From Entomortierella parvispora E1425 (lineage: Eukaryota; Fungi; Mortierellomycota), in NCBI GenBank assembly GCA_020891255.1, contig BQFW01000001.1, forward strand, positions 558,001 through 622,000: a stretch of 64,000 nucleotides of DNA, read 5' to 3'. A model generated the notes under the pieces. It saw nothing but the letters and a program-made list of their open reading frames with translations. It had not been told where the DNA came from and ran no database searches. This document shows positions 10,906 through 47,100 of this stretch, piece after piece. A program made the position numbers and the translations under genes. Position 1 is the stretch's first letter; every line of letters starts with the position of its first letter.

Positions 10906-10910
10906 TCCTC

Positions 10911-15040: not shown

Positions 15041-15252
15041 ATTCATGACTGGTTTCTTGGCTGCAGGCACTGTAAGAGCTGGCTGTGGTGGAGATCCAAC
15101 ACGATATCCTTTCGGACCCCTTTTGTGCGCCTGACGCTTCTGATTTACAGTAGTAGTATCAACAAGGTGTTCGTTCGATGCTCGTAGTTTCGGGACGATC
15201 CTGGCTTTAAGAGAGGGATTTATTCCAAATTCTGTGCGTAGTCCATTATAGA

Positions 15253-24484: not shown

Positions 24485-27400
24485 GCTGTGTCTGATGTTG
24501 TTCTGTGCAATAGGAGTATCGAGGGTGGAGTGGAGACAAGAAGTGAGTTTTATTATATTGCAAGTTTCTAGCTTTTGTAGGTACACATCGCGTGATGTCA
24601 CCGTATTCCTGTTACACCTTCCCCTTTTAAAAAATGATACCGTGCTGCTCTTTGAAGGTTGTGACCAAGTCCATGCAGTTGTCCAAGTTGCTTACTGGGA
24701 GCCATTCGTCAGCTTCTCTGCCGTAGCCTTTGAATGACACTAGGAACTGGTGTTGTCTGCGGTAGAAGCGGTACTTTAAAATTTCGTCCACTTCATACTC
24801 CTCTTCGCCGTCAATTACAGTGGGATCCACGGGGGCAGGAGCTCGAATGCCGAGTGACTCCGGGGACGGCAAATAGGGTCGAAAGGTATCAACGTGGAAG
24901 ACGTCATGGATTTTGTAGAATGGTGGCAGCTCGACGCGGAAGGTGACAGGTGAGTGTTGCTCCAAAAGTGTGAACGGGCCAAGGAATTGAGGTCGAAGTT
25001 TATCGGCTGGTCTGATACTGTCGGCAGGGATGGTGATATTGGTGGCACGCAGCAGGACCTTATCGCCAACCTTGTACTTGTGATCCCGTCGTCGCTTGTT
25101 TGCCTGTTGCTCCTGATGATCCTGAGCACGCTGCAGAGCATCCTGGGCCAGGGCAAGGGTGGTCGCCTGCTCAGTCAGGAAGGTATCGACAGTGGGGACT
25201 GAGCTGCTGGGTTTACCGAGGAGAGCGGTGGGGGAGACGAGGGTGCTGGCCAGAGTTGAGGAAGAACGGCGAGTATCCCGTGGATGCATTGACAGCGTTG
25301 TTATAGGCGAATTCCAGTGACGGAAGGAGCTGGTCCCAGTTAGACTGCTTGTTGTCAATAAACGCTCTCAACATAGTCTTCAGCGTCTTGTTCATAACCT
25401 CTGTCTGCCCATCCGTCTGTGGGTGGTAGGCGGTTGACAGTGCAAGTTTGACATCCATTAGCCTGTGCAACTCTTGCCAGAATCTACTAGTGAATCGAGT
25501 GTCGCGGTCCGAGATGATGGATGTTGGTGTGCCATGCAGCTTAAAGATGTTGTCAAAAAACTGGTGGGCGACGTCGACGGCTGTGGCAGAGGTAGTACTG
25601 GGGACGAAGTGAGCTTGCTTGGTCAGCTTGTCGACAAACACTGTGATGGCGTCAAAATTTCTAGCTGTGGGCGGAAGAGGGCCGATGAAGTCCATGGTGA
25701 CTACCTCCCAACGTTGCGAAGGAATGGGTAGCGGTTGCAAGAGTCCAGCTGGTCGATCCTGTGAGTCCTTGTTCCTTTGACACTTCTCGCAGGTTGCTAC
25801 ATACTGCTGGGTATCCTTGGCGATGTGGGGCCAATATACGAAACGGCGCAGGTTGTCGTAAGTCTTTTGAAAACCAAAGTGTCCAGCAGTGGCAGAGTCG
25901 TGAGCGTCGTGCAAGAGAGTGAGGCGGATCGGGGAGTGCCGAGGGATGGCCAGGGTGGTTGCTCCACGTCGGGTAAAGTAGAGGAGGTTGTTCTGGAATG
26001 AATATCCATTGGCAACCTTCCCATCCAGGCAATCCTTGTAGATGGGTCCAAGTCGAGGATCGTCGTTGTAGTCCTGGACAAGCTGGTCACGGACGTCCGG
26101 GGACAGGGAGACGCTGAGGTTGTATAGCTCAACAGGGTCAGGCTCGCGGTAGTCCGGTCGTCGGGAGAGAGCGTCTGGGACGATGTTGTCAACTCCTCGC
26201 TTGTACTTGAAGTCAAAGTCGTATTCCTGAAGCAACTCCATCCAGCGAGCCTGTCGACGAGTGAGTTTGGGCTGTGTGGGGAAGTGGCGGAGGGTGGCGT
26301 GGTCGGTGTGGACGCTGAACTTGGTTCCATCGAGGTAGTAGCGCCAAGTGCGGAGCGCATGGATGACAGCCAACAGTTCCTGCTCATGGACAGGGTAGTT
26401 CCGCTCAGCTGACTGCATTTTTCCTGGAAGTGAATGCGATGGGATGGGTATTCCCTTCCCGGTCAGTCTGCAGCAGCACTGCACCGATGGCGAAACCGGA
26501 TGCATCTGTTTCGACAAAGGTGAGAGATCAGGGTCGAAGATGCGGAGGACGGGGGCGGAGCAGATGGCGCGTTTGAGCTGAAGGAATGCAGATTGTTGTT
26601 CGTCGGTCCATTTGAAGGGAGTGTTGTTGGCGAGGAGGGAAGAGAGAGGGAGGGCAATCCCTGCAAAGCCCGATACGTACTGTTGATAAAATTGCGCAAG
26701 CCCCAAAAATTGCTGGACGTCCTTTGTGCTCTTGGGGGTGGGCCAGTCACTGATGGCTTTGCTGAGCCCGGCCGATGTTTTGATCCCGTCCTTCGTGATG
26801 GTGTGGCCCAAAAATTCAGTTTCGTCTTGCATGAAGGAGCACTTGCTCAATTTCGCGTACAGACCGTTCTTGCGGAGGAGAGCCAGGACGCTTCGGAGAT
26901 GCTGCAGGTGTTCTTTCTTTGTCTTGGAGTAGATCAACAGATCGTCGAGATACACGACAACCCATTTGTCCAAGACTGGATCGAGCACTCGCAACATCAT
27001 ATTGGAGAACGAAGCAGGAGCGTTAGTAAGGCCAAAGGGAACAACATTGAACTCAAAGTGACCATAGCGACAACGGAAGGCAGTCTTGTGTGTGTGTGGT
27101 TCAAAGATACGCTGCTGATGATAACCGGATAACAAGTCCAACTTGGAGTAATAGCGTGCTCCACGGAAGCGGTCAAGTAGCTCGTCGATACGGGGCAGCG
27201 GGTGTCTGTTCTTCCTGGTGATCTTGTTGAGGCCACGGTAGTCGACGCACATTCGGAGTGTGCCGTCCTTCTTCCGCACAAAGAGCACGGGGGCGCCATA
27301 GGGAGAGGTACTGGGTTTGATAAAACCTGCTGCTAGCAATTGGTCCAGTTGTTTGCGAAGTTCGTCAAGCTCGGCGATTGAAAGTCTAATGACAGGGCGG

Positions 27401-30400
27401 AAGGGTGGGTCGGCTGTCGGGTCGGTCTCGATCTTCATAGCATCACCACGGTCTGGGGGCAGGCCGTCCGGGAGTTTCTCCGGAAAGACATCAGCGAACT
27501 CTTCCATGACAATGGACCGCACCTCTGGGGGTCATATCGGGAATTGTACGCGGTTGGTCAGTTTCTTCAGAGGGCTCTGGGGTGTTGCGAATAAGGGCCA
27601 GGAACACCTCCGAGCCGGGCAGGGTTGCCATGGAATGAAAGTGCATGTGTGTGAGGAGGAGTCCTTTGGTGCGGCTTTGGATGTGATCGGCCTTGAAGCC
27701 GCGGCAGCTCCATTTGACATCGATTCCATTGTGAGTGAATGAAGATCGTTGGTGCGCCAATTGATGCAAGGGTTAACTTTGGTGAGCCAGGGTTTGCCAA
27801 GGATGAGGTCGTATTTGTTGAGAGGATAGAGAATAGGGTTGAGCGAATCGGAGTAGTCGCTGCGGTTGAGGGTGATGGGGACGGTGTGTGATGTGAGGGA
27901 GGAAGAGCCATTGGGGAGGAGGATGGGGATGGGCAAGCATTCAGTGCGGAGGAGCTGGTGTCGCTTTTGAAAAGACGAACTGATAATATTACCTTCTGCA
28001 CCACCATCAATCAGGATTCTGGCAGCGTGGCCATTGACAGAACCGATGAAAGTGAGCAGTTGGCTCTCTGCCTTTTGGACAGTGAATTCGTGTAGGCGAA
28101 TCGCACGACGCTTCAACTTCTTCAACTGACTTTTTGGACAGAGGTACACTAGGTGCCGGCGGTACAGCGAGAGGGTCCGGTTCATCTGTATCGGAGGATC
28201 TAGGTAGAGGAGCGGACAGGGCAACTGGAGCGGGCGAGGCAACAGGTTTTTTGGTTTGGTTTTGGTTTCGGTCCGATAGAACAACCAGAGCATCGTGGAT
28301 GTGAGTTCGCTTGTCATGATTGGAGTCATGTTTCTGAGGTGTAGAATCAAGTGAAGTTTTATTTGAGGTACTTAGCTCAGGGTTGTTGGCTACAGTTTCG
28401 ACAACTGGGGTCCGGACCGACCCTAGTTGCCGGAGGCTTTTCCCGAATCAGGGGATTCACCCGCGGTTACTTGATTAATTCCTCGGCTGCCGTTGCCGTA
28501 CTTAGGGCAATTGGGACTGATGTGACCCAATTCGCGGCAGCGGAAGCAGCCACCGTTACGTACAAGGTACTCTCGGTCGGCGGCGGTCAGGGGTGCGGGG
28601 CGATCTCGAGAAGGGTTGTTAGTACCGTTGGTGGGGCGGTTCTGTAAGGAGCGGTGAAGGGTGCCGAGTTGCTTGTGGATATTGTTGAGTTGGATATGAA
28701 TATTGTCCACTTCCATTGCGTTGGGGTCGGTGATACCAGCAGAGGATCCCGAGGCAGCCAGTGCTTTGGCACCGAGTGATGGGTCTTCAGTGTGGAAGAT
28801 ACGACCGAACTCCTCCGCGGCCTTAAAGAGTCTGGGCAGATCTATGGTGTCGTTGCCTGCATTAACAATGGCCACTTCCAGCATCTGGCGAAGCTGAGTA
28901 GGTGCACCACTGAGAAAGGCAGTACGGATAGTATCGTTGAGAACTGCGTTGTCGGCGTAGTAAGACTGGAGGAGTAGGTGGTATTCACGGGCTTTGGTAA
29001 TATAGGCCATGACGTTGGAGATGTTCAGTGGCAGTGTCATTTTCATTTGCATTGTGAGGGCGAGAATGTGCTCCTTAAACTTCGCAGGGCTGAACTCGGC
29101 GGCAAGGAGCTCGCTGAAATCCGGGAATGAGGTGTCGGATGGCTTGTTTAAGAGTGCCCACCAGCCGATAACCTCATCGCCGGCAAAGGCAAGGGTAACC
29201 CCGACCTTGCGAGATTCGGCAATTCCAGCGCCATCGAAGAAAAAGGTCATGCGTTTCAGAAAACCGAGAACAGAGAATCCGTCGCGCTTGCCGTTGAACG
29301 GTGTTGGATGAGGGAATTTGAATGACGGTGTCGCGGAGTCCATGTTGGGTGAATTGTCGAGGGAGAGTTGATCGAAGAGGGATACGAGGGGGTCCAGGGT
29401 GTGAGTGTGTCGGAGGGTCAGTGGGTCAGTGAGGTCAGTGGATCGAAAACCTTTGCTACCATGCAATAGGAGTATCGAGGGTGGAGTGGAGACAAGAAGT
29501 GAGTTTTATTATATTGCAAGTTTCTAGCTTTTGTAGGTACACATCGCGTGATGTCACCGTATTCCTGTTACATTCTGCCATTTCTAGAATCCACACACTC
29601 CTTTGCCCGAGGAACTGGACTCTCAAATCTTCAATTCTTTCTCGGATGCCATAAATGCCGTTCGACAGTGGTCCCTTTCGTGTGGATTTGATATTCGAAT
29701 CGCCTCAAGCAAAAAGCTATCACGCGAGTGGATGAGTACGTTTCCTTGCAATGCTGGCGTGTGCGAGGCAAGGCCGAACGACTAACGCAGTCCCTTTTTT
29801 ACAGAGGTTCTAGAATGTACAAAAGGGAGGAGGCATAGTCCTAAGAAGACCTCTGTACCTGAGTTGGAAAGAAATAAGACCTCGATTCGCTGCGACTGCA
29901 AATGGTACATTCAACTCCGTGCAGCAAGCAAGGACGGGAAGGACTGTACCGTTTATCGGAAGAACGACACTGCGGCTCACAACCACAAGATGATAGCTCA
30001 CGCCGAGATATTTAGTCCCTCGAGACAGAGGTTAACAACACCCATGAGGGAATGTGCTCAAGAACTTTCAGCAGCAGGGGCGAGCATGCCTGTTATCAGG
30101 GAAGTTCTCAAGAGGCGAAACCCCGAGCGGTACTTCTCTGGGAGAAGAGTGTCGAACGCAATGGCAAGACGAACTACCGGCTCTCACGGCGCGAACAACG
30201 CCCAGCGTCTGGTAGCAATGTTGACGGGTTTCCGCAAGAAGGATGAGCGATGGTATGCTAAAGTTCAGACGGACAACAATTCGGTCATCAGACGCGTCTT
30301 TTGGATGGATCCACTCCAAAGGGATCTCTATTCACGATACCATGATGTAGTGATGAACGACACAACATACAACACCAACCGCTTCAAAATGCACCTCAAC

Positions 30401-32706: not shown

Positions 32707-34203
32707 ACGCTTCCCAGGGACAGGAGGCGGATGTGGTTTTTGTGGCTCGTAAAGATAGAACGATCTATCAAAAAAACGCACAGACCCAGTTTAGCGAGGC
32801 AGGCTCATTCCTTTCTCACGCTCATCTCAAAGCAGGATCTCGTTTGATTTTTTTCAACCGCTTCTCTCTTTTCCCCAGGCCCTGGCATGCCCCCATTGTC
32901 CTTTTTTCTGTCCATGCACCGTGCGTACATTCTTTTCTTCGTTACCCACGTTATAGCACGTTCCCAAGCTCTTTTGTTCGTTACCCACGCTAGTGCACGT
33001 TCCCAAGCTCTTGTTCTTGTTCATGCGCAGATGCATGCTCATTTTCTCTTTTGCTGCCCACACCTTTGCACATTCCCACAATTATGTTCCATCATGTACT
33101 GTACGTAGGGGGTGCAAAAGCGCAAATGGCACTGGCGGGAGGCGGGGTGTTGATCAGTCTTCCCTGGAGACGATAGATGGTGAGGGTTTCGCTGAGACAT
33201 TGATGCGCCATATTACACCTGGCAATCGGGTGTACTTAAAGAACCCGAGAAAAACGTCGACTTACAATGAAAGAGACAGTAAAGTCTCCCATTTGAGAAC
33301 AAAATCAGACCAGCGCGTCCCAACTGCACATCCACGTGCACTCCCGTCGATACATCCACAAACACCATCGGCACGACCTCGTCGAGTGTTGCAGACTGAG
33401 TACATCAGCGCGAATCCACCTGCAGTAAGAAACAGCAACAATCCCTGCCATGCTGTCAAGTTGTAACCCGGTACTGTTTGAGGAGGCTCTAGCCAAGATC
33501 TCAAGAGAGATTGTAAGCCAATCCAGCACGCTTTTGTTTAAGGAATGGGGTTCAATTTCAATTGCTGACACGTATCAATGCTTTCTTTAGATTCTCAGGC
33601 TTGCAAGTATAACATGGACAACGGCCAGTCAATCGCTGAGGACGGTGAGTCTCATGGTTGCACAAGAAATCATGGCACATCCCATTCAACAAACTTTCTG
33701 TAAAAAATATAAGAGAATACAATACCTCTGGGGGGATTCTAGCGATAATTTTTTTTCTCCCTTTGCCTTCCTCGCCTCTCGTCATTTCTCGTCATTTCTC
33801 GTCATTAACTATTACCCAAGCGACGCTCGATCACATGCCTGCTTTTTGTTTATCAATTCATGCGTTGTGCATATCCTTCTGCCTTGGGCCGTTCCCTTTG
33901 CGCATTCCTCATCTGTCACGATGTTCCTCGCAGCGCGTACAGGCTACCTCCTGGACACGCGTGAGAATTTTTTTTTTTTTGTTATAATTTATAAGGTATT
34001 TAATAGATGCATAATTTTTTTTCTTTTTTTTTAAGGCAGCATCCGCTACTCTTACCATCCTTTTCCATAAGTAAGTTCATTCTCTTCCCAGTCATCCATT
34101 CTCTCCCTAACGAAAATTCGCAGATCATAGCCACATAAAAGAGTGCATCACCCTGATCAAACATTGCCTATTTTACACATCATTCGACCCACAAGAAACC
34201 GAC

Positions 34204-35268
34204 ATGAAAACCGAAGAGTTCCAATTCAAGCTCGATGCAAGAACCATGCCAGCCGATCCAGTGGAGCTGCGTGGAAAGTCTCGCGACAGTGGGAAAATGA
34301 TCATCCTTGATCGCTCGGCTGCAACAATCGAGCACTCTGAATTCCCAAGTATCTGCGACCACCTTCAGTCTGGCGATCTTTTGGTGCTGAATGATAGCTA
34401 CATGCTGTCGAACACGCTGTCATTCCGGCATGGCGAGGAACTCGTGAAAATCACTCTGTACGGTCATGAGCCTGATGAGTCCAGTATTGTATTTATTGCG
34501 TCAGGGCACAAGATGTCGCTAGGACTTACCTTAACATCATCGGATGACGATCAGCTCACTTGCGTCTTCATCGCTCCATTACCTGATCAGCTCTGGCAGG
34601 TCAAGTTCTCATCGGCTGAGCGACTAATGGAGACACTCGACAAGTTCGGTCTGCGCTGTGATGAGACAATCCATCTCAATCCAACTTATTGGCGAACAGC
34701 ACCTGAAGCTTACCGCTCAGTATACGCCAAGAAGCCTGGTTCCCTCGAGATTCCTTCGGCCGGTCTTCACTTCTCCTCTGAGCTCCTGGCCCGCATCGCT
34801 GACAAGGGGGTCGAGATCGCCAATATCACTCTGCATGTTGGGGCCACTGAGATTCTGGCCGTTCGTCATATCAGTGAGGAAGAGATCGAGAACCACAAGG
34901 TGAGATCCGAGTATTTTGAGGTCAGCGCCGAAAGTGCCGCGCAGATCAGTAAAGCAATGGATGAGAACCGTCGTGTTGTTGCCGTTGGTACGACAGTCAT
35001 GCGAACCCTTGAATCGCTTGCTCTCCATAACTCGCCAAAGGTCACTGTGCAGGCTCAAGCAGGTTGGACCGATCTCTACATTTATCCTGGATTCCAATTC
35101 AAAGTTGTCAATGCTCTCCTTACGAACCTCCACCGGCCCCGATCCAGTCACATTGTTCTCACGGCAGCTTTTGCGGGTAAGGATCTTGTCATGCGCAGCT
35201 ATGCCGAGATCCTTGATAGAGGTGGATACGAATTCGACATGTTTGGGGACAGCATGCTGATTGTGTAG
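34204..35268 (+). CDS. queA: S-adenosylmethionine:tRNA ribosyltransferase-isomerase (QueA) family protein, divergent, intronless
   Basis: Full-length collinearity with bacterial QueA: F.F.L, GDLLVLND, Y.KKPG...P.AGLHF, ITLHVG, RVVAVGTT..R.LES, IYPGFQFKVV.AL.TN.H.P.S, AFAG, Y.F..FGD.MLI. Confidence 0.9.
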   Translation: MKTEEFQFKLDARTMPADPVELRGKSRDSGKMIILDRSAATIEHSEFPSICDHLQSGDLLVLNDSYMLSNTLSFRHGEELVKITLYGHEPDESSIVFIASGHKMSLGLTLTSSDDDQLTCVFIAPLPDQLWQVKFSSAERLMETLDKFGLRCDETIHLNPTYWRTAPEAYRSVYAKKPGSLEIPSAGLHFSSELLARIADKGVEIANITLHVGATEILAVRHISEEEIENHKVRSEYFEVSAESAAQISKAMDENRRVVAVGTTVMRTLESLALHNSPKVTVQAQAGWTDLYIYPGFQFKVVNALLTNLHRPRSSHIVLTAAFAGKDLVMRSYAEILDRGGYEFDMFGDSMLIV

Positions 35269-35600
35269 TCATCAGGTGCTCAAGAATTTTAGCGGCAGTG
35301 CGTCTTTCTGTCGCCTTTATTACGGTAGAGGAGATATTATAAATACATTCTATGCAAAACTCGGATTTTTCCCATCGTTATTCTTCCGTCGAACGACCCT
35401 AAAAACGCACGATCTCTCTCTATTTTGTGTCATTTCTGACAAAGGGTCGCTTTTTGTGCTCTATTTTCGCTCCTGACAAATGGTCAAATTTCACGCTCTG
35501 TTTTCACTTTCAGTGTTCAAAGACTCCATCAGAGCCCAGGGTGTTTGAACCCAAGAGCCCTAGTCCTCTGATCTTCGCGACGGCATCACTGGAAGTACTG

Positions 35601-38600
35601 TGCAATAGGAACGCTGGGAACGGAGTGGAGACAAGAAATGAGGTTTATTCTATTGCTAATGACTATCTTATATAGGTGCGCACCGCGTGATGTCACCGTA
35701 ATGTTATACATGTGTTACACCTTCCCCTTTTAAAAACTGAGTCCACGCTGTTGTTTAAAGGCTGCGACCATCTCAGCGGAATGATCCAAGTTGCTGAGTG
35801 GAATCCATTCGTCTGCTTCTCTGCCATAACCTTTCCAGGATAAAAGGAACTGGTGTTGCCTGCGGTACTTTCGGTATTTCAAAATTTCGTCTACTTCGTA
35901 CTCATCTGCGCCGTCGATGATGGTAGGATCCGGGGGTGCAGCGCTTCGAGATCCGAGTGATTCGGGCGACGGCAAGTAGGGTCGGAGGACGTCGACGTGG
36001 AAGACATCGTGGATTTTGTAGAACGGCGGAACTTCCACGCGGAAGGAGACGGGAGAGTGCTGCTCCAAAAGTGTGAAAGGGCCAAGGTACTGTGGTCGCA
36101 ATTTGTCTGCGGGGCTAATACTATCGGCGGGGATCGTGATGTTGGTGGCACGCAGCAAGACCTGGTCTCCGACTTTGAACGTGTGGTCGCGGCGTCGTTT
36201 GTTTGCCTGCTCTTCCTGATGGTCCTGGGCACGCTGTAGAGCATCCTGAGCAAGGGTGAGCGTTGTTGCTTGATCGTTAAGAAAAGTGTCGACGGTGGGG
36301 ACGGTAGAGTTGGGGACACTGAGGAGAGCTGCTGGAAGTCGAGGATGCTGTCCACTGTTGAGGAAGAACGGCGAGAATCCAGTTGAGGCGTTGACGGCAT
36401 TGTTGTAGGCGAACTCCAGTGATGGAAGAAGCTGATCCCAGTTAGATTGCTTGTTATCGATAAAAGCCCGTAACATTGTCTTTAGGGTCTTGTTCATAAC
36501 CTCCGTCTGCCCGTCGGTCTGTGGGTGGTAGGCCGTGGAGAGCGCCAATTTCACATCCAGCATTCGGTGTAACTCCTGCCAAAACCTACTTGTGAATCGA
36601 GTGTCGCGGTCGGAGATGATGGAGGTGGGGAGGCCATGCAGCTTGAAGATATTGTCAAAAAACTGGTGTGCCACATCGAGAGCGGTGGCCGTGGTGGTGC
36701 TGGGAACAAAATGTGCGAGCTTGGTGAGTTTGTCAACAAAGACTGTGACGGCGTTGAAGTTGCGTGCTGTTGTTGGGAGGGGACCAATAAAGTCCATGGT
36801 GACAACTTCCCATCGTTGAGCTGGGATAGGAAGAGGCTGCAACAGTCCAGCAGGTCGCTCCTATGACCCTTTGTTCCTCTAACACTTGTCGCAGGTGGCC
36901 ACGTACGTCTGGGTGTCATTGGCGATGTGTGGCCAGTATACGAACCGACGCAAGTTGTCAAAGGTCTTCTGAAAGCCAAAGTGTCCAGCTGTGGTCGAGT
37001 GGTGGGCATCGCGCAACAGAGTGAGCCGGATGGAAGACTTTCGAGGAATGGCTAGTGTGGTGGTTCCTCGCCTAGTGTAGTAGCGGAGGTTGTTCTCGAA
37101 CCGATATCCATTGGCAACTTTTCCTTCCAGACAGCCCTTGTAGATGGGTCCGAGGCGAGGGTCGTTCTCGTAGTCCTGCACAAGTTGGTCACGGACGTCG
37201 GAGGACAGCGACAGACTGAGGTTGTGGAGCTCAATGGGGTCAGGGTTGGGGTAGTCCGGTCGGCGTGAGAGGGTGTCAGGGACGATATTCTCAACTCCTG
37301 GCTCGTACTTGAACTCCATGTCGTATTCCTAGAGCAACTCCATCCAGCAAGCCTCTCTCGAGTGAGTTTGGGCTGGGAGGGGAAATGTGGCGAAGAGTGT
37401 AACGGTCGGTGTTGACAGTGAACTTGGCGCCGTCGAGGTAGTAGCGCCATGTGCGTAGAGCGTGGATGATTGCTAGCATCTCCTGCTCATGGGTGCGATA
37501 GTTCAGCTCGGCTTATTGCATTTTTCAGGAAGTGAATGCAACCGGATGAGCGTTGCCATGTCGGTCCACCCGGAGCAGTACTGCGCCAATGGCGAAGCCA
37601 GATGCATCCATGTCAACGAAGGTAGGGAGATCAGGGTCGAAGATGCAGAGGACGTGGGCAGAGCAGATGGCGCGTTTGAGCTGGAGGAATGCAGATTGTT
37701 GTTCGTCGGTCCATGTGAAGGGAATGTTGTTGGCGTGGAGGGAAGAGAGAGGGAGGGCACTCTGTGCAAAGCCTGATACGTGCTGTTGATAAAATTGCGC
37801 AAGCCCCAAAACCTGCTGGACATCCTTTGTGGGTGAGCCCGGCTGATGTTTTGATTCCATCCTTTGTGATTGAAAATTCAGTCTCAGCTTGCATGAAGGA
37901 GCACTTCCTCAATTTCGCGTAGAGACCGTTCTTGAGGAGTAGGCCCAAACGCTTCTGAGATGCCGCAGATGTTCTTTCTTTGTCTTGGAGTAGATCAACA
38001 GGTCGTCGAGATAGACAACGACCCATTTGTCCAAGACTGGGTCGAGTACTCGCAGCATCATATTGGAGAACGAAGCGGGGGCGCTCGTGAGACCAAAGGG
38101 GACAACGTTAAATTCAAAGTGACCATAACGACAACGGAAGGCAGTCTTGCGGGTATTGGGTTCAAAGATTCGTTGTTGGTGATAGCCTGATAAGAGATCC
38201 AACTTGGAGAAATAGCGAGCACCTCGGAAGCGGTCAAGTTGTTCATCGATACGGGGCAACGGGTGTCGGTTCTTCTTTGTCATTTTCTTGAATCCACGAT
38301 AGTCGACGCACATGCGGAGTGTACTGTCCTTCTTTCGAACGAAAAGAACAGGGGCGCCATATGGAGACGTACTGGGTTTGATAAAGCCAGCCTTCAGCAA
38401 TTGATCTAGTTGTTTTCTAAGTTCGTCTAGCTCCGCTATCGAGAGTTTGATAACGGGTCGAAAGGGAGGGTCGGCTGTGGGGCCGGTTTCAATCTATCGC
38501 GTCGCCGCGGTCTGGAGGAAGTCCGTCTGGGAGCTTCTCGGAAAAGACATCAGCAAACTCTTTCATGACAATGGACCGCACCTCAGGGGTCATGTCTGGA

Positions 38601-40754
38601 ATTGTACGCTTTTTGTCAATCTCGTCAGTCTCATCGATCTCGTCAGAATGTTCTAGGGTGTTGACTTCGGAGCCAGGTAAGGTTGCCATGGCGTGGAAAT
38701 GCATGTGTGTGAGGAGGAGGCCTTTAGAGCGGGACTGGATGTGGTCAGCCTTGAAGCTACGACAGTTTCACAGAACGTCAGCGCCATTGTGGTTGAAGTG
38801 GAGATAGTTGGTGGGCCAATTGATGAGGGGGTTGATCTTGGTGAGCCATGGTTTACCAAGGATGAGGTCGTATTTGTTGAGGGGGGAGAGGATGGGGTTG
38901 AGTGTGTCGGAGAAGTCGCCGCGGTCGAGGGTGATGGGGACGGTGTGTGATGTGATAGAGGAAGTGCCGTTGGGGAGGAGGATAGGGATGGGCAGGCATT
39001 GGGCTCGATCAAGCTGATGGCCTTTTTGAAACGAGGAACTGATAATATTACCTTCTGCCCCACCATCAATTAGAAAATTAGAACTTTTGCAGGGCGACCG
39101 TTGATCGAACCAATGAAGGTGAGCAGTTGGTTCTCTACCTTCTCGATAGTGAATTGGTATAGGCGAATCGCGCGACGCTTCAACTTCTTCAACTGGCTTT
39201 TAGACAGAGTTACACTAGGTGCCAGCGGAACAGCGAGAGGGTCCGGTTCATCTATAGCGGAGGATCTAGGTACAGGAGCGGACGAGGCAACAGGGTTCTG
39301 GTTTTGGATTTGGTCCGAGGAGTCAACCAGTGGGGCAGGGATGTGAGCTGTCTTATCATGATTTGGGGCATGTTTTTGGGGTCCAGAATCACGAGAAGCT
39401 TTCTTTGAGTTACTTAGCTTTGGAGTGCTGGATCCCCCTCCGCCACTGGTGTGACAAAGAGGTTCAGTTTCGGCAGCTATGGTCCGGACCGACCTTAATT
39501 TCGGGGGCATTTTCCAAAGGGGAGCCGCCCTTGTTAGAAGAGGTGATGTTGTTGACAGAGACAGGTCCACGGCAAGACTTGGCGTAGTGACCAGCATCGA
39601 TCTTGCGGCAGCGGAGGCAACCGTTGTTCTCGATGAGGTATTGCTTCTGTTCAGGCGTCAGTCTTTTCAAAGAGGAGTTCTGTTGGTGGGCGGGGCGAGA
39701 TCGATTGTTAATTCTAGAGAGGATATAGACCTGGATAGAGTGACTGTTGATAATCTTCACAAGTGAAGCGACGGTGATGTTATCAATGTCCATTACCATG
39801 TTGGCGTCATTAATAGCGTTAGCACTGGTAGTAGTGCAGTCAAGTCCTGCAGAGGAAGACGAAGAAGGAGGGGGGGGGACAATGCACTCGCAGATCTGAT
39901 CGAAATGCTCGGCTACGCTGCACAGATCTTGGATAGTGCAATTGGGATTGTTGAGCTTGTAAGTCAGGAGAACCTGTCGGAGAGTTCTGGGAGCACCCTT
40001 CAAAAAGCACGAAGTGGCGGCCTGTTCAAGGGTGAGACGGGCGCGGGGATCATGTCTTGGGGACAAAGGAATGACATGTACTTGCGGGTGCGTGCCACGT
40101 AGTCCGATACCGTAGAGGTCATCCTGATATCGAATAACATGTTGCGCACTTGGTCAATAAAACCAGCCGGCTGGAATGCAGCGCGGAAAGCTTTGACAAA
40201 ATCGTCCCAGGGGGCCTCTTTGTAGAGGGCATTGCCCTCCCACCACAAGGTGGCGTCGTCGGTGAGGAAGATGGTTGCATGCAAGGTGCGCTCGTGGTCG
40301 GGCATGCGGGTGCCTTTGAAGAGGCGAGTGATCGCAGTGAGCCAGATCTCACATTTGAAGCCATCTCGTTCGCCCTTGTAGTGTTCGGGCTGGGGGAAGT
40401 GGAAGGTGGTAAATGAAAAGAGACTAGGTGCAGAGGGCTGGCAGACAGGAGCGAGGTGAGCTGGTGCCTGGTTGGTGTCCAAAACAGGGTTGTCTGGGGA
40501 AGTCATGGTGAGGCGGTGGAGGAGGTCAGTGAGGGTGTCAATGGGGTCAAGGGGCGATTGGTGAGGACAGAGTGGTTCGAGGAGGTCAGAAGTTAAGGGT
40601 CAGTGGTCAGGGGATCGAAGGCCCTTTGCTATCGTGTTCTGGGAGTACTGGGGAAATTAATTTCCCCAGGTTGTCCAGTCGCTGACTTTGTGTCTTTGGT
40701 CAGGACTCTCTGCGCTGAGTCGAGTCAGACGCCTACCCGACATTGGAGTGTACA
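35601..40754 (-). mobile_element. Degenerate Ty3/gypsy chromovirus with non-matching LTRs
   Basis: gag (CLRCRKIDAGHYAKSC), protease, RT (YLDD), integrase and chromodomain with stops and deletions; LTR 35601-35719 related to the first element, next to the PPT; candidate LTR 40635-40754 next to a degenerate PBS. Confidence 0.9.
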
Positions 40755-40840
40755 AATTTCTGTCCAATCCTTTGGTACTATATCCGTCTGATGCTGTCCT
40801 TCCTTGTCTATGATATACTTTGAACAACTATTAATACTGC

Positions 40841-40872
<32 letters not shown>

Positions 40873-41151
40873 GAGGCGCGACGCGACGAAGAGCAATCCG
40901 AGGTAGGTAATCACGTATACCGTGCCAACTGGGATCGCGCGACTGTGAACGTGTACGTGACAACCCGGATCAGCAGTCACGGCTCGAAAAAAAAAGAGAT
41001 ACTCATTCCTGCGGGGACAGACACAACCGAGGGACCGACCGAGAACAGCATTCCTTTACTCCTTCTTCCGTGTTTCTTTCATTCTTGACCGTCTCCTTTC
41101 TCTGTTCGTTCCTGCGTCGCCGTACTTCTCATTCCTCGCTCTCTACTTACG

Positions 41152-43957
41152 ATGTCATCAGAACTATGCGAGGATGCCCAGGAGCTCGACTTTCTCATTA
41201 CGAGAATGAAAGATCTGCTCGTCCAATGTAATGTACCCCTCATTCCTCTTTGTCTACTGCCCTCTCGTCCTCTTGCCCGCTTCTCTGCGGCAATGAAGGA
41301 GGGGAATCGCCTTCCGATTCCTTTACGCTGCAACGTCTTTACGTCTAGATGACTCACATTCGAACAACGCTTTTTTTTCTATTCCCTTTCCGCTGCGCAT
41401 GATTGACTTTCGTGGATGACCCGAATATGGACTGATCCGAACACACGCACAAAAAATTAATCATGCAATTGCTCTCTTTTTATCCGCGCGCGTGGGGATC
41501 GGCCGCATCCATATTCAACCGATACAACCGAACAGACATGGAGCAGAGTCGACAGTGCGAGGGACTCTTGGTCGATTATCGGGAACCGGAAGAACTGGAG
41601 CGGATCATGGACTTTTCGTTGCCAGACCACGGTGTCGGACCCGAAGGTAACGTGAACGACATGAGGAGGGATTAGCCATTCTTAATTTCCACCTGTCTTT
41701 GCGTCAACGTTACACAGATTTGAGGTTGCATGCGGCGACTCGGGCTAATGACCGATCGTTTGTTTGTTGTTTTAATGTTTGACACACCATTGATACTGCT
41801 TGCTTATATCCATCTGATAGGCATCTTCCCCACCATCACACAAACGTTGCAGCACAGTGTCAACACATTCTCGCCAAGGTTCATGGACAAACTCTATGCC
41901 GGCTCAAGTCCTATCGGAGTCATGTCTGAGCTCTTGCTCGCTGGCCTCAACGGAAACTCCCATGTTTATCATGTCTCACCGGTTTTTACCCTCATGGAGA
42001 TCCACGTCACCCGAGCTATGGCTCGGCTCTTTGGCTTCAAAGGCGAGTTTGCAGGTGGACTGTCTTGCCCTGGTGGAAGTGCCAGCAATCAGCTGGCAAT
42101 GGTTACTGCTCGTAACTCGTTGTACCCAGAAATCAAGTTGTCTGGCTACTTTCCACGCCCTTCTGTTGCCGAGGTTCAGGAGTTGGAGCAACTAGGATAC
42201 CCACCTGTGTTGATCGAGCGAATCAGTAACAGTCGAGGAAGCACGTACGGAAAGCTGATTGCATTCACGAGCAGCGCTGGACATTACTCTCTCGAGAAAT
42301 CGGCTGTTATCATGGGTCTTGGAACAGAAAACATTGTTGGCGTGCCTTGCGATTCTTATGGCGCCATGATGCCCTTTGAACTGGGTAAGTTTTTTATTTA
42401 TTTATTTTTTTAATTTTTTTTTAGTTTATATGAAAGCTGGAGTTGGAAGCAACTCTGCAAGAATGTTCAGAATGGCGTGCTTGGATGTGCACTAACAGGC
42501 GCACGAACCCCTCTTCAAATCTTTAGAGCGTTTGATCCAGGAGCATATCGCTTGCGGACACACACCCTTTTTTGTGAATGTAACAGCAGGAACTACGGTC
42601 TTGGGCGCTTTTGACCCCATTCGGCCCTGTGCTGAGATTGCGAGAAAATACAATATCTGGCTTCATGTGGATGGATCGTGGGGAGGATGCACTGTCTTTG
42701 TTCCGGAATTGGCAAGGACTTTGCTCGATGGTACAGAGTTGGTAAGTGCACACTGGGAAAAGAAATCGAATGATGGGTCGAATCGCGAGGGCGATCGCGT
42801 TTTGACGGTCGGAGTGAAATGTGGGGAACCAAAAAAAGAAATCTTCTCTCAGACTCATCGATTTTTTTTTTTGTTTATTTCAGGCCCAGTCAATTACTGT
42901 GAATCCACACAAGATGCTTCAAACATCTTTGCAGTGCTCGTTGCTCTTGGTGCCAGATTCGTCCATCTTCCCTCGTGCGAACGCCCTCAAGGCCAACTAC
43001 CTCTTCCATGGACAAAGCCACGATCTTGGTGACGGTACTCTTGGCTGTGGACGAAGATCGGATGCCATCAAGCTGTTTCTCGGATGGAAGTACTATGGAA
43101 AACTCGGATACCAGGCCAGGATTGAAAAATCATTATCCAACGTCCGTCGCTTCATAGAGTTGCTTCATCAGGACGACATGAGGGGACAACGGATTCAAAT
43201 GTTAAGGCTCGGCAGCGAAGACCATGATCTGGAGGAGAAGCTTGTGAAGGAACGACAACATACCCGGGACAAGACCCAGCCTAGTCTTTTGCAGATCTGC
43301 TTCTGGTACCGACCCAAGGGGAGCAAGAAGATTGATTGGCGTGGCACAGAACGTCTTTGGAAGCGCTCCGTCGACTCTTTGACTGTTGCAAACGCTTTGC
43401 CTCAGAAAAAGAGGGCCATTCTACTTAAGGGTGATGCGGATTCTGCAGCCGTGACCCCAGTCTTGAATGGTGGTTCAGGATCGCCTCAGTTCACCAGCCA
43501 ACCTTCCTTGGAGTCTGCAACACCCATTTCAGAGGTAACTCATTCCAGATGCTCGTCAGCAGAGTCTCTGACCTCCTTTGACTCTCATGGTTCGAGCGCG
43601 ACCTCATTCTCGACGTGCGCATCCGGGACACCGCCCACGACTGGACCCAGTCTTTCCTCGACAAAGAGCTTGGGTGAATCGGACTATGGCGTCATTCTCG
43701 AGAGCCCACAGGACAGAAAGGAAGCCAAAGCGTGGATGGAGAGTGTGACTAAGGCCATCCATGCAAGGATCCGAGTCCGTGGTGGATTCATGATTGACTA
43801 TGCCCCCCTGGGTTCCTACTTGCCTGTTTTCTTCCGCGTGGTCCTGAACCCACCTACAATCCGGGAATTGGATTTGGTCAAGTTGGTAGAGGAGATTCTG
43901 GAATGTGGCCAGGATGTCGCTGATGCCTTGCCCATCCCTGAATGCTGTCGCGCTTAA
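41152..43957 (+). CDS. Group II PLP-dependent decarboxylase (GAD/CSAD/GADL1-like), multi-exon
   Basis: PRFMDKLYAG, PGGSASN, HYSLEKSA, TAGTTVLGAFDP, WLHVDGSWGG, NPHKML (PLP lysine), CGRRSDAIKLFL, FFRVV. Confidence 0.9.
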
Positions 43958-44093
43958 TTTTATATATCACATCCAGCCGGGAGAGACTTTGCGAAGGGAG
44001 AAAGAGCAAAAGCAACCACATTTTGTAGACCTTACACATTTTTTTAATATAATAATCGCGTATCATGAGAGAAATCAAACAGATGCAACCTGT

Positions 44094-45622
44094 TTACGTG
44101 CGGTTGCACCTAGAAAAGTGGGACTGGACCATTTGGCATAGCTTCACGTTAGTCGCCTTTACCGGGTGCATGTCCTCGGACAAATCTCGGAGATCTGGCC
44201 AGGTGTCCGACATCCATTGGACGTCCCTGACCTGCAAATTTTGTCCTGTGCTCAAGAAATTCAAGACCTCAAGATGTCGAAGTGATTCCAAATGACCCAG
44301 ACCAGTGTCTAGACTCAATTCCAGATATCGACTTCCGTAGTACCTGGGAGGGACATCCAGCTCCAAGTCTCTGAGTTGTGTTAAGGCCGAGATCTGCTTG
44401 AGGATCAGCTCATTCCATTGCGGTTCTACTTCTGCAATCGCCAGTCGAAGCATCCTTAGTCCAAGACATACCCAAGGTTGAGCCAGATGGCGAGGATACT
44501 GGGCTAGGTGGACCTGCCACTTCTGAACAAGCGATTCCGTCTCTCCCTCTCCATCATCTGACGTCTCTGCGGCGTTCCATTTTGGATCCAGATCCACCAT
44601 CTCCTGTCGACATTTCTCCGCCAGAGCATCCTGAACCATGTCAAACGCAAACAAGACTGGGGAGTTGAACATCATCAGTTTGGGGCAGGAGGACAAGATC
44701 ACCTGGACCATCCAGCTTTGTACATTGTCCGAGTCGTCCAGGTCCAAATTTTCAAGAGTCAGAAAGTGTCTCCCAAGGCTCCTAAATGAGCTAGGGCCGA
44801 AACCCAACCTAGGGATGTTGAGTTTGGTCAATGGGGCGCACATGTCCAACATCTTGCTGAGTAAATCGTCCGTGAACAGCGTGCTTTGATAGTGATCCAA
44901 TGACAGACTATGAATGTTAGACCAAGGCCGTGTTGAGATCTGAGAGGCCGGGAACGATGATGAGAGAGGTCCTGTCATCAGCAGAGTGCGAGTTACACTG
45001 CTTCCATTCTCGTTCATGCAGAGCGTCGTCAAGTTGGGAAGCCAAAGGCCATTGTCCTTTTCAAGCAAGAGATTCGAAGGGTCGATAATATAATCCATAT
45101 TGCAAAAGCTGAGACTTAAAACCCGCAAAGAACCCAACCGTCCAATGAGTCGGATAGCGTCCTTGGTCAGATAATCAAGAATAGCTTCCGTAGGCCAACA
45201 AACCTGTGATCCAAAAACGCTCCCCCGAAGTAATAATCGCTGCCTGGATCCTGCTCGATGGTCAACACCTGGAGTCCCAACGCCGATTCAAGCAGGGCGA
45301 CCGTCTTCGAGGCACGAGGAGTGTTGGGGGGGATATTTAGATACAGGCTTTGGAGACGCGATGGACCACCGTGATTAAAATCGAGTTGGTACAGTAACCT
45401 GACATACGGACCCTCGACAATAACTCTTGCCCTCCGAAGAAGATGTCCATACTCAGAGAGGACAAAGAGAGGTGGCTTTTGAGGTGAGGTTTCATCCAAG
45501 GTATAGTAAAGGCAAGGGGCAAGAACTTGATGCCATGTCTTGTTGACGCGGATGCTGCATGTCAGGTCTTGATGGGTGAGAAACTTGCCGATGCATGTGA
45601 GAAGCTCTGGCGGCACATTCAT
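44094..45622 (-). CDS. F-box/RNI-like LRR protein with one homopolymer frameshift near 45215, possibly intact
   Basis: F-box N-terminus PPELLTCIGKFL..CSIRVNKTWH; LRR-like repeats and PWVCLGLRML; adding one T to the T-run restores a single ORF. Confidence 0.8.
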
Positions 45623-47100
45623 GCTGAGATGGTCAGAGGAGAAAAAGGGGCAATGTCATGAGAGCATGTGCTTTGCATTCATCGCGCCGCGCGGCAGTCA
45701 ACGCCACCAATCTCTAATCACGTGTGAAGACCTGCATTCGCGTCAATGGGTCTCTGGGCAGCGATCTGGTTCATGTTGCAGCGATCTGGTTCACGTAAGC
45801 TGTAGTGTACACGGAAGCACGAAACATGACAAACATGACAAGTACAGCAATATGGCGAGATCTCTTCACACTCTTTCGTCTTTTTTTTTTTTTTTTTTTT
45901 TGAAATTCGTTTTTTTATCGAAGTCGGCTCGAGGTATATCGTACACCATCAAAATAGCAGCCACATTTTAGAGTGGCCTGAGGATGAGAGTGGGAGGACT
46001 TCAGATAGACATGGGCGAGCTGGCAGCAGTGTACGGTGGGAATTGGTGGGTATTGTCGAAGAGCGTGAGTGGGGACTGTCGTGATCCCAGGCATCACGTG
46101 ACGCCTACATGTTGAACCTCATTTCTTCGACCTCTAGGTTCCTAGGCCGGCTCCCGGCCCATAGGCCCCCTTGGATGGCCCTCCGGCTCATCAGATCCCT
46201 TGAAGCCGGCACCGCCGACGCAAACCTTCAGGATACTCCGGATCCAATGAATAAGTCCCTCATTATTACCTATAGAACATAGCAACATCTTTGTCCCGCG
46301 CTGAGTGCTCGCGCCTATAAAAGAGAGGCTTTCAGCCTCTCTGAATAAATCAGTTTTATCTTTCTTTTCATACAACTCATCTTCCTTCCCCTTTGCATGC
46401 CAAGCTCTCCCATATCCTGGGCGTTCCTTTACATTGCTGTCCTGTTCCTTGCCTTCCTTGTCGATCTTGCCTCAAATGGCTTCCCTCGCACCTTCTCAGA
46501 CGCGTCCCCGTCTCCCTGTTGCACTACTTCTAACCCCAAGGCCAAGCCACACCGCTTGTCTCGCCCTTATTCTTACAGGACAGCGTGCAGGGCACGCATG
46601 GCCGTTCGGGTGGGAGGACTGCTATTCGCCACCAAATTTTTTCTTTTTTTTTCCCCTCCTCATTCAACAATTCATCGAAAGCACCTGTAATAAAGTACAT
46701 TCCCACTCTGCTGCGGTCCTTCCACTTAATCCAAAGCTGCTCTTTTATCAATGTCAACAGATTTGGGACCATACAGCAAGAGCAGAAAGTTTGAACCCCT
46801 TGCGACTGCGTCTTCTCTCGAAAAGCTTGACTACTTTGACAGAATCTTCAAAGATCCACCCAACGCTGAAGAATTAATGGCCAGAACATACCCAACTGGT
46901 ACAGCCCTTTCACAAATGAAGGTCCTTCACACGGAGGTCACTCACACAAATCTGTTCACTCCAAAAAAATGAGCAATTGGACAGTGGGAAAGGCTCTCGT
47001 GATGTGAACTACTCGGTGCAACTCAAGAAGTCGGGTCGTTCATGAGAAGATGTTAATGCATGGGAGTGAACAATTAAATTAAAAAAGCCACTCCATGATC

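What the first reader, a model, noticed from the sequence alone, without database searches (positions are those of the whole stretch)
34204..35268. Bacterial-type QueA in a fungus, with remodelled substrate-binding motifs
Established: QueA transfers the ribosyl moiety of SAM to preQ1-tRNA to make epoxyqueuosine in bacteria, whereas eukaryotes salvage queuine through QTRT1/2 and are not known to use QueA. Seen: a complete, intact, intronless 354-aa ORF with host-like GC in an intron-rich genome, wedged between two transposons, so not a contaminant contig. Several near-invariant motifs are changed: PLPPYI to IHLNPTY, AVAAPTAG to SLEIPSAG, GAGTF to GATEI, TNFHLP.STL to TNLHRPRSSH, RFFSYGD to EFDMFGD. 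Inference: horizontal acquisition (soil bacteria or endobacteria) giving either a fungal preQ1-salvage route or a new SAM-dependent ribosyl-transfer activity on a different substrate.
Basis: partly seen in the sequence, partly recalled or inferred. Interest (0 to 1): 0.85.

Follow-up and report, generated by a model that had tools for sequence, protein, structure and literature searches.

The report
Divergent QueA-like enzyme gene in Entomortierella
A soil fungus carries an intact, bacterial-type relative of the tRNA enzyme QueA that belongs to a small, unstudied branch of the family shared patchily by fungi and soil bacteria, and this branch probably uses the same unusual SAM chemistry on a small molecule rather than on tRNA.

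Summary
Window 34204-35268 (+) is an intact, intronless 354-aa QueA-family gene (PF02547, 292 bits). It lies inside a 2.94-Mb Nanopore contig of Entomortierella parvispora E1425, between decayed transposons, and its composition matches the host.

It is not an ordinary QueA, and it is not unique to this fungus. It belongs to a tight subfamily (60-74% identity) found in about 30 named fungi. These are Mortierellaceae and seven classes of Ascomycota, including a tandem triplet in Actinomortierella. About 18 soil bacterial species also carry it (Actinomycetota, Burkholderiaceae, Massilia).

The subfamily scores 226-264 bits on NCBI's QueA equivalog models; canonical QueA scores 415-482. It keeps the catalytic core, 52 of 77 canonical-conserved columns. 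The other 25 columns are replaced by different residues that are nearly invariant in the subfamily. It has lost 12 of 21 conserved basic positions and is uniformly acidic.

Bacterial copies never sit in the ruvAB-queA-tgt context. About half form an operon with a class-B flavin monooxygenase, sometimes followed by a sarcosine-oxidase-like enzyme.

Best reading (about 0.55): a horizontally spread SAM ribosyl-transferase/isomerase paralogue that acts on a small-molecule amine. A tRNA preQ1-salvage role is less likely. The substrate, the expression of the gene and the direction of transfer remain open. I found no paper on this subfamily.

The parts
34204..35268 (+). Intact, intronless 354-aa QueA-like (PF02547) coding sequence, a member of the divergent fungal/actinobacterial/Burkholderiaceae subfamily
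   Evidence: ORF. Pfam 292 bits. Below the NCBIfam QueA equivalog cut-offs, 253.7 vs 324 and 230.1 vs 267.45. Matches 114 of 115 subfamily-conserved columns. Atlas model pLDDT 0.87, TM 0.87-0.90 to the canonical QueA cluster.
35730..38400 (-). Context only: decayed Ty3/Gypsy chromovirus (integrase core, SH3_Tf2-1, chromodomain, integrase zinc-binding domain, RT) in several frames, directly downstream of the gene
   Evidence: Pfam hits. Called gene with Integrase_H2C2/SH3_Tf2-1/Chromo. No LTR pair of 80 nt or more in 34100-46000.
25213..27522 (-). Context only: Gypsy-type pol ORF (RT, RNase H, integrase), about 6.7 kb upstream
   Evidence: Called gene L039:1010-3304 with RVT_1/RT_RNaseH/Integrase_H2C2/rve. 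ORF list.
41152..43957 (+). Context only: nearest ordinary host gene downstream, an intron-containing PLP-dependent decarboxylase. It shows that the gene lies in normal fungal chromatin.
   Evidence: Called gene L039:16949-19754, 679 aa, PF00282. Exon ORF 42821-43957 hits Pyridoxal_deC.

Best explanation
The gene encodes a functional paralogue of QueA that no longer works on tRNA.

Shown: it keeps the QueA fold and the conserved catalytic core. It belongs to a discrete, strongly conserved subfamily that has moved horizontally among soil fungi and soil bacteria.

Inferred: it still binds SAM and performs QueA's ylide-type chemistry. In that chemistry adenine is lost, an amine adds to the opened ribose, the ring closes to an epoxy-dihydroxy-cyclopentyl group and methionine is released. 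The proposed acceptor is a small-molecule amine instead of preQ1 at tRNA position 34.

In many bacteria the product would be processed further by a co-transcribed class-B flavin monooxygenase and, in some, by a sarcosine-oxidase-like secondary-amine oxidase. Fungi carry the QueA-like gene alone, so the enzyme must be useful by itself. Possible uses are modifying or detoxifying an environmental amine, or making a carbocyclic metabolite. The substrate is unknown.
For: 1. Distinct clade. The whole group collapses into one 50% cluster at 510 bits, and the next relatives score 305, 271 and at most 245 bits. The subfamily branch has support 100/99 and a stem of 0.84.
2. It fails the QueA equivalog thresholds. 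The subfamily scores 226-264 bits against 415-482 for canonical representatives, with cut-offs of 324 and 267.
3. The core is kept and the periphery is rewritten. Of 77 canonical columns conserved at 85% or more, 52 are retained. These include D58, N63, E236, GTT262-264, R267, E270, T307-N308, H310, P312, S314, Y333 and G348-D349. The other 25 are replaced, mostly by residues invariant in the subfamily and absent from 131 canonical sequences (P16, N70, I183, E216, E343, D345, M346). The PLPPY loop is replaced and variable.
4. Twelve of 21 conserved basic columns are lost (K/R66 to Y, R71 to T, position 76, the 99-105 patch, R343 to E). All 55 members are acidic, with median pI 5.3 and net charge -14, against pI 7.85 and +1 for canonical QueA.
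5. Genomic context. None of 18 bacterial loci shows ruvAB, tgt or yajC. Canonical loci from the same scan show ruvC-ruvA-ruvB-queA-tgt-yajC.
6. Flavoprotein partner. Six loci spanning Actinomycetota and Betaproteobacteria have a same-strand class-B FMO immediately downstream. Trinickia and Massilia add a DAO/sarcosine-oxidase-like gene.
7. A more distant member of the same signature-bearing clade is a plasmid-borne second copy in Salmonella, next to MarR, MFS transporters and a monooxygenase.
8. Copy number. There is a tandem triplication in Actinomortierella and there are multiple copies in Aspergillus tanneri and Mortierella GBA30.
9. The window copy is under constraint. It matches 114 of 115 conserved columns.
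Against: - No biochemical datum exists for any member.
- No ligand-bound QueA structure exists (PMC10491745). The roles of the changed residues (tRNA versus SAM binding) are therefore inferred, not known.
- The nearest outgroup (Verrucomicrobiae MAG, 47-51% identity) shares many signature residues. It sits among housekeeping genes (rsmE, dnaX, rmlBD) and could be that organism's working tRNA QueA. If so, the signatures alone do not exclude tRNA activity.
- Canonical QueA pI values range widely (5.0-11.3), so acidity is only suggestive.
- Half of the bacterial carriers and all fungi lack the flavoprotein partner.
- I could not test whether carriers lack tgt or have a second, canonical queA. For Actinomycetota and Burkholderiaceae this rests on general knowledge.
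- Expression in E. parvispora is untested.
Confidence: 0.55

Rival explanations
1. It is a working tRNA-level QueA. The fungal queuine-type TGT inserts environmental preQ1 into tRNA, and this enzyme converts it to epoxyqueuosine.
For: The fold and all core catalytic residues are retained. Eukaryotic TGTs can insert preQ1-type bases in S. pombe and human cells (abstract of PMC9561289). Algae are predicted to run a bacterial-type TGT/QueA/QueG route. The nearest outgroup sits in a housekeeping context.
Against: - It scores below the equivalog thresholds.
- Conserved basic positions and the PLPPY loop are lost.
- The same protein, at about 70% identity, occurs in Actinomycetota. By general knowledge these largely lack the Q pathway.
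- It is never linked to tgt, queG or queH, and is instead linked to flavin oxidases.
- It has no N-terminal extension, unlike the algal QueA, which is predicted to be mitochondrial.
- Tandem amplification is unusual for a tRNA-modification enzyme.
Confidence: 0.2
2. It acts on a free 7-deazaguanine, either the preQ1 base or its nucleoside. The product would be an epoxyqueuine-like compound that the eukaryotic TGT can insert, or that serves as a 7-deazapurine metabolite.
For: Only the macromolecule-binding part of the ancestral substrate would need to change, which fits 'core kept, basic surface lost'. The enzyme would be useful alone in fungi. Actinomycetes make 7-deazapurine natural products (general knowledge).
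Against: No preQ0/preQ1 biosynthesis or transporter genes lie next to any copy examined. Residues next to the core are also rewritten (Q171R, T172S, A183I, T185S, T216E). This suggests a changed acceptor pocket and not merely loss of tRNA contacts.
Confidence: 0.1
3. It is a silent passenger: an intact but unexpressed or functionless relic of an old transfer, stranded in a transposon-rich region.
For: It lies between decayed transposons. No RNA run was listed. Runs from other samples under the same species label hold almost none of the region's words.
Against: The ORF is full length and matches 114 of 115 subfamily-conserved columns. That is fewer deviations than the median member, which has 2. 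Its composition is fully ameliorated to the host, which implies long residence under purifying selection. The gene was called in the RNA-guided annotation of the assembly.
Confidence: 0.07
4. It is bacterial contamination or a chimeric assembly join.
For: The wild strain harbours a Burkholderiaceae-related endobacterium.
Against: DNA came from a cured line. The 2.94-Mb Nanopore contig carries the gene about 592 kb from its end, flanked by fungal retroelements and intron-bearing genes. Gene GC of 0.51 equals the host value. No Mycoavidus homologue was found. Orthologues occur in dozens of independently assembled fungi.
Confidence: 0.01

Closest known systems
Bacterial QueA, tRNA preQ1(34) S-adenosylmethionine ribosyltransferase-isomerase (EC 2.4.99.17; PDB 1VKY, 1YY3, 1WDI)
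   Same: Same Pfam domain over the full length, same two-domain fold (TM 0.87-0.90) and same length. It has 33-40% identity, and 52 of 77 highly conserved columns are kept, including the acidic, His and Asn core.
   Different: It scores below the equivalog cut-offs. Twenty-five conserved columns are replaced by other invariant residues. The PLPPY loop is lost, there is a 3-residue insert after HVG, and 12 of 21 conserved basic positions are lost. It is uniformly acidic. It is not linked to ruvAB, tgt or yajC, and it occurs in fungi and in bacteria as a stand-alone or flavoprotein-linked gene.
Predicted mitochondrial QueA of green and red algae (Chloropicon, Galdieria), working with BL-TGT, QueG and YhhQ (PMC12301720)
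   Same: It is a QueA-family gene of bacterial origin in a eukaryotic nuclear genome.
   Different: The algal genes co-occur with a bacterial-type TGT and QueG and are predicted to be organelle-targeted, that is, a complete tRNA pathway. The fungal gene has no presequence and no partner genes nearby, and it belongs to a different, divergent clade.
Uncharacterised plasmid-borne QueA paralogues (Salmonella enterica pIndS104-CTX; Sinorhizobium meliloti pRmeGR4a)
   Same: Both score below the QueA equivalog cut-offs and sit in small-molecule contexts. The Salmonella copy shares most signature residues with the subfamily (P16, R171, S172, I183, S185, E216, L309, H316, D345, M346).
   Different: They have only 34-37% identity to the window protein. 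Their partners differ: MarR, a class-A monooxygenase and MFS transporters in one; radical-SAM enzymes and a decarboxylase in the other. The Salmonella flavoprotein is not homologous to the subfamily's class-B FMO.

Membership tests
QueA (tRNA preQ1(34) SAM ribosyltransferase-isomerase), functional equivalog | Full-length Queuosine_synth (PF02547) domain and QueA two-domain fold | tested here: met
   Pfam 292 bits, profile positions 2-322 of 322. 1VKY E 1.5e-57. Atlas structural TM 0.87-0.90.
QueA (tRNA preQ1(34) SAM ribosyltransferase-isomerase), functional equivalog | Score at or above the curated equivalog cut-offs (NF001140 at 324, TIGR00113 at 267.45) | tested here: not met
   The window protein scores 253.7 and 230.1 bits. 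Other subfamily members score 226-264, and canonical representatives 415-482.
QueA (tRNA preQ1(34) SAM ribosyltransferase-isomerase), functional equivalog | Family-invariant motifs (PLPPY loop, Q-T, AAPTAG, G-TF, TNFH-P-S, RF-S-GD) | tested here: not met
   52 of 77 conserved columns are kept and 25 are replaced. Many of the replacement residues have 0% occurrence in 131 canonical sequences.
QueA (tRNA preQ1(34) SAM ribosyltransferase-isomerase), functional equivalog | Genomic association with queuosine or translation-linked genes (tgt, yajC, ruvAB, queG/H) | tested here: not met
   Absent from 18 bacterial subfamily loci and 6 fungal loci. Present in control canonical loci.
QueA (tRNA preQ1(34) SAM ribosyltransferase-isomerase), functional equivalog | Host has a TGT that puts preQ1 into tRNA, and oQ/Q is present in tRNA | not testable with these tools
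   No whole-genome search of E. parvispora or of the bacterial carriers was possible. The scan's notes hold nothing on TGT or queuine.
QueA (tRNA preQ1(34) SAM ribosyltransferase-isomerase), functional equivalog | Catalyses SAM-dependent formation of epoxyqueuosine on tRNA | not testable with these tools
   This needs a biochemical assay.
Inter-kingdom horizontally transferred gene | Fungal sequence nested within, or sister to, bacterial sequences, with bacterial outgroups | tested here: met
   The subfamily clade (100/99) mixes fungi and bacteria, and the successive outgroups are bacterial.
Inter-kingdom horizontally transferred gene | Patchy distribution incongruent with the species tree | tested here: met
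   Monophyly of the Mortierellaceae copies is rejected (AU p 0.007). Onygenales, Helotiales and Hypocreales are intermixed. A single fungal clade is not rejected (p 0.21).
Inter-kingdom horizontally transferred gene | Physically integrated in the recipient chromosome, not contamination | tested here: met
   It lies in the interior of a 2.94-Mb long-read contig from a cured line, between fungal retroelements and intron-bearing genes, and its GC3 matches the host. Read-level check not done.
Inter-kingdom horizontally transferred gene | Identified donor and direction | tested here: inconclusive
   The base of the subfamily is a polytomy. The gene is 6-14 GC points below its flanks in most Actinomycetota, so fungus-to-bacterium transfers are possible. 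No endobacterial (Mycoavidus) homologue was seen.

The most novel reading that the evidence does not exclude
This subfamily would be the first non-tRNA use of QueA chemistry. It would be a stand-alone enzyme that transfers and isomerises the ribose of SAM into an epoxy-cyclopentanediol on a small-molecule amine. It has been exchanged repeatedly between soil fungi and soil bacteria, possibly also from fungi into actinomycetes. In bacteria it is coupled to flavin-dependent amine and heteroatom oxidases. It would then define a new route to carbocyclic (aminocyclopentitol-type) metabolites or a new xenobiotic-modification mechanism.
Probability: 0.45. Interest if true: 0.85.

Novelty: new variant of a known kind. 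Interest (0 to 1): 0.62.

Why it matters
A 2023 review covers QueA under SAM sulfonium-ylide chemistry and mentions it only for queuosine on tRNA. It notes that no ligand-bound structure exists. I know of no other enzyme that uses SAM as a ribosyl donor.

This subfamily is conserved, acidic and separate from tgt. It has spread across kingdoms and forms an operon with flavin oxidases. It is a concrete, testable candidate for the same chemistry on a different acceptor.

It also offers soluble, probably tRNA-independent homologues for the missing structural work on QueA. It is a clean case of repeated bacterium-fungus gene exchange, with hints of fungus-to-bacterium flow.

For the fungus itself the practical point is narrower. 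The automatic 'queuosine biosynthesis' label on these fungal genes is probably misleading.

Tried and rejected
- Expression: no RNA run was listed for the gene.
After that I sent nothing containing those places to any search tool. I worked on 34100 onward and on positions up to 34005.
- Literature: five searches for QueA-like or fungal QueA work found nothing on this subfamily ([badly posed], 34, 79).
- Biosynthetic cluster in fungi: six fungal loci show unrelated neighbours and no partner-gene remnants.
- Plasmid vehicle: no subfamily member in PLSDB, best hit below 40%.
- Endobacterial donor: no Mycoavidus or Mycetohabitans hit.
- Kitasatospora context (AlkZ-like, QueA-like, HEAT protein, egt operon): conserved only within that genus, so treated as uninformative.
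- The Salmonella plasmid flavoprotein as homologue of the subfamily's FMO: rejected, since only the dinucleotide-binding motif matches.
- Atlas search for host identity was uninformative. Identity was obtained instead from the assembly accession and PMC8759367.
- LTR search downstream found no pair.
- A source for 'Actinobacteria lack Q' gave only indirect support, so this point is marked as inference.
Full report
OBSERVATION

Window 34204-35268 (+) is an uninterrupted 354-codon ORF. It matches Pfam Queuosine_synth over the whole profile (292 bits, E 6e-87). It aligns end to end with the three solved QueA proteins (1VKY E 1.5e-57, 1YY3, 1WDI). The ESM Atlas holds a confident model (pLDDT 0.87, pTM 0.88) that superposes on the canonical QueA cluster at TM 0.87-0.90.

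The gene lies between transposon remains. A decayed Ty3/Gypsy chromovirus sits directly downstream (35730-38400, minus strand). A Gypsy pol lies 6.7 kb upstream.

PROVENANCE

The protein is recorded on GCA_020891255.1, contig BQFW01000001.1 (2,944,119 bp), at about 592 kb. A genome announcement identifies BQFW01 as Entomortierella parvispora E1425 (PMC8759367). It was assembled from 409x Nanopore plus Illumina data of an endobacterium-cured line, into 19 contigs with 49.4% GC.

The gene's GC (0.51) and GC3 (0.56) match neighbouring host ORFs (0.55-0.63). The next host gene has introns. Contamination or a chimeric join is therefore very unlikely. After that I sent nothing containing those places to any search tool and worked beside them. 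No RNA run was listed for the gene, so expression is untested here. The strain's RNA-seq exists as DRA013164.

NOT A ONE-OFF, AND NOT AN ORDINARY QueA

The word-index search returned a compact set of full-length proteins at 59-74% identity.
- About 39 are named fungal proteins. They come from Tirmania, Mortierella sp. GBA30 (2 copies), Modicella, Actinomortierella ambigua (4), eight Aspergillus species (A. tanneri has 3), Tolypocladium, Metarhizium (3 species), Trichoderma, Cladobotryum, Nannizzia, Venustampulla, Dactylellina, Alternaria, Ophiobolus and ten lichen fungi.
- Seventeen are named bacterial proteins from Nocardia, Kitasatospora, Nocardiopsis, Spirillospora, Actinosynnema, Pseudonocardiaceae, Burkholderia, Paraburkholderia and Massilia.

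A pattern scan of one genome from each of 185,579 bacterial species, which finds close relatives only, recovered about 18 carrier species. It added Trinickia and Allosphingosinicella.

In the exhaustive search of 50% representatives, the whole group is one cluster at 510 bits. The next relatives score 305, 271 and at most 245 bits.

On NCBI's QueA equivalog models, canonical representatives score 415-482 bits. Subfamily members score 226-264 and the few intermediate relatives 253-305. All of these are below the cut-offs of 324 and 267.

WHAT IS KEPT AND WHAT IS CHANGED

I aligned 55 subfamily members, 5 intermediates and 131 canonical representatives. Seventy-seven columns are at least 85% conserved in canonical QueA.
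- Fifty-two are retained. These include D58, N63, E236, GTT262-264, R267, E270, T307-N308, H310, P312, S314, Y333 and G348-D349.
- Twenty-five are replaced, nearly always by a different residue that is itself invariant across the subfamily. Examples are A16P, Q171R, T172S, A183I, T185S, T191S, T216E, F309L, A336I, R343E and S346M.
- The PLPPY loop is replaced and variable.

Most signature residues never occur in the canonical set. They are shared with the intermediates and with a Salmonella plasmid paralogue. Only G74F, Q171R, T191S, L317I and A332S are specific to the subfamily. The 'remodelling' is thus an old property of a divergent QueA-like clade, not something that happened in this fungus.

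Of 21 columns that are conserved K/R in canonical QueA, 12 are lost (K/R66 to Y, R71 to T, position 76, a patch at 99-105, R343 to E). All 55 members are acidic, with median pI 5.3 and net charge -14. Canonical representatives have median pI 7.85 and net charge +1, though with a wide range.

The window copy matches 114 of 115 columns that are at least 95% conserved in the other members. The only deviation is V34I. This indicates purifying selection.

GENOMIC CONTEXT

As a control, canonical QueA loci fetched by the same scan show ruvC-ruvA-ruvB-queA, and in L021 also tgt-yajC. None of the 18 bacterial subfamily loci shows any of these genes.

Instead, six loci have a same-strand gene starting 15-45 nt downstream. 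The loci are from Nocardiopsis, Spirillospora, Actinosynnema, a Trinickia MAG and two Massilia species. The gene encodes a flavoprotein of 420-450 aa with two dinucleotide-binding domains:
- Pfam families Pyr_redox_3 and Lys_Orn_oxgnase.
- Nearest NCBIfam model MSMEG_0569, below its cut-off.
- Nearest solved structures are the type-II FMOs 4USR, 4USQ and 4A9W.

That flavoprotein's own tight family (54-80% identity) contains only bacteria, from the same genera. No fungus is named among its hits.

In the Trinickia MAG and in Massilia rubra a third gene follows. It is a DAO-family oxidase whose nearest solved relative is monomeric sarcosine oxidase, a secondary-amine oxidase.

Fungal loci show the gene alone, in unrelated surroundings. 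These are the window and loci from Tirmania, Tolypocladium, A. tanneri, M. album and Actinomortierella. They hold no remnants of the partner genes, and every copy is gap-free and therefore intronless. Actinomortierella carries three tandem copies.

PHYLOGENY AND TRANSFER

A careful IQ-TREE of 59 rows gave these results:
- The subfamily is a clade (100/99) on a long stem (0.84). Its bacterial outgroups include a Verrucomicrobiae MAG.
- Thirty-four fungal copies form a supported clade (95/92) whose internal order ignores taxonomy. Mortierella GBA30 falls among Ascomycota, and Nannizzia groups with Trichoderma, Metarhizium and Venustampulla.
- The window's copy and Tirmania's fall outside that clade, in a basal polytomy with the Burkholderiales and actinobacterial groups.

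AU tests do not reject a single fungal clade (p 0.21). They do reject monophyly of the eight Mortierellaceae copies (p 0.007). The history therefore includes transfer or ancient paralogy with heavy loss, not simple vertical descent.

The gene is 6-14 GC points below its flanks in most Actinomycetota. Examples are Nocardia 0.54 vs 0.65, Pseudonocardiaceae 0.53 vs 0.68 and Kitasatospora 0.63-0.67 vs 0.73-0.74. It looks recently imported there from a donor with moderate GC, so fungus-to-bacterium movement cannot be excluded.

No homologue from Mycoavidus or another endobacterium appeared.

INTERPRETATION

Shown:
- A distinct, constrained QueA-like subfamily.
- Horizontal spread across kingdoms.
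- Retention of the catalytic core.
- Systematic replacement of peripheral conserved residues and loss of conserved basic positions.
- Separation from tgt.
- An operon with flavin oxidases in bacteria.

Inferred: the enzyme still carries out QueA's SAM ylide, ribosyl-transfer and isomerisation chemistry (mechanism as reviewed in PMC10491745), but on a small-molecule amine. Its secondary-amine product would be a plausible substrate for the linked FMO and sarcosine-oxidase-like enzymes. In fungi the enzyme works alone.

I put this at about 0.55. The main weaknesses are these:
- There is no biochemistry.
- No ligand-bound QueA structure exists to say what the changed residues do.
- The nearest outgroup has a housekeeping context, and it shares many signatures.
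- I could not test for tgt or a second queA in the carriers.

The tRNA-level preQ1-salvage reading remains possible (about 0.2). Activity on free preQ1 has about 0.1 and a silent relic about 0.07.

COMPARISON WITH KNOWN SYSTEMS

The closest characterised family is bacterial QueA. The protein passes the fold and domain test but fails the equivalog score, the motifs and the context.

Eukaryotic QueA has been predicted in green and red algae, together with BL-TGT and QueG in mitochondria (PMC12301720). The statement that eukaryotes never have QueA is therefore too strong, but that case is a complete tRNA pathway of a different clade.

Two plasmid-borne paralogues, one in Salmonella and one in Sinorhizobium, also fall below the cut-offs and sit in small-molecule contexts. 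They suggest that diversification of QueA beyond tRNA is broader than recognised.

I found no paper on any of these.

VERDICT

It is a new variant of a known kind, of moderate to high interest. The value lies in the subfamily as a whole more than in this single locus.

Noticed in passing
L042:7001-8080 (Salmonella enterica plasmid pIndS104-CTX, CP101356.1 283028-284107): A plasmid-borne second QueA-family gene, 37% identical to the window protein and below the equivalog cut-offs. It sits behind a MarR regulator, divergent from a class-A FAD monooxygenase (rifampin-monooxygenase-like) plus MFS transporters. It shares most signature residues of the fungal/actinobacterial subfamily.
   Followed up: partly
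L043:6992-8017 (Sinorhizobium meliloti GR4 plasmid pRmeGR4a, NC_019846.2 8165-9190): Another sub-threshold QueA paralogue, embedded in an apparent biosynthetic cluster. The order is NTF2-like, QueA-like, hypothetical, two radical-SAM proteins, a diaminopimelate-decarboxylase-like protein and a CPBP protease.
   Followed up: partly
L005:6704-7835, 10001-11065, 14912-16045 (Actinomortierella ambigua): Three tandem copies of the QueA-like gene within about 9 kb, all gap-free against the window protein. The amplification suggests selection on dosage.
   Followed up: partly
L006, L008, L009, L010, L020, L034 (actinobacterial loci), gene at 8001-9065: The QueA-like gene is 7-14.5 GC points below its flanks (GC3 as low as 0.62-0.64 in Nocardia and Pseudonocardiaceae). 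This implies recent import from a donor with moderate GC, possibly a fungus.
   Followed up: partly
L013:7009-7839 and L014:6981-7895 (Massilia): An OAA-family lectin with four sugar-binding repeats lies directly upstream of the QueA-like/FMO pair in both Massilia species. Its relevance is unknown.
   Followed up: no
window 33400-36000: Runs from nine other samples under the same species label hold 0.00-0.01 of this stretch's sampled words, including a 1.1-Gb run. The locus may be strain-specific, or those runs may be RNA, amplicon or low-coverage data.
   Followed up: no
window 60309-63977 (-): A long intron-free ORF (1222 aa) encoding a GAF-PAS-HisKA-HATPase sensor histidine kinase. Its nearest Atlas feature clusters are all bacterial, but that listing is not evidence of transfer.
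   Followed up: no
P0313, P0315 (Sphaeroforma arctica, Creolimax): The closest eukaryotic relatives (42-43% identity) of the bacterial class-B FMO partner are from ichthyosporeans, not fungi.
   Followed up: no
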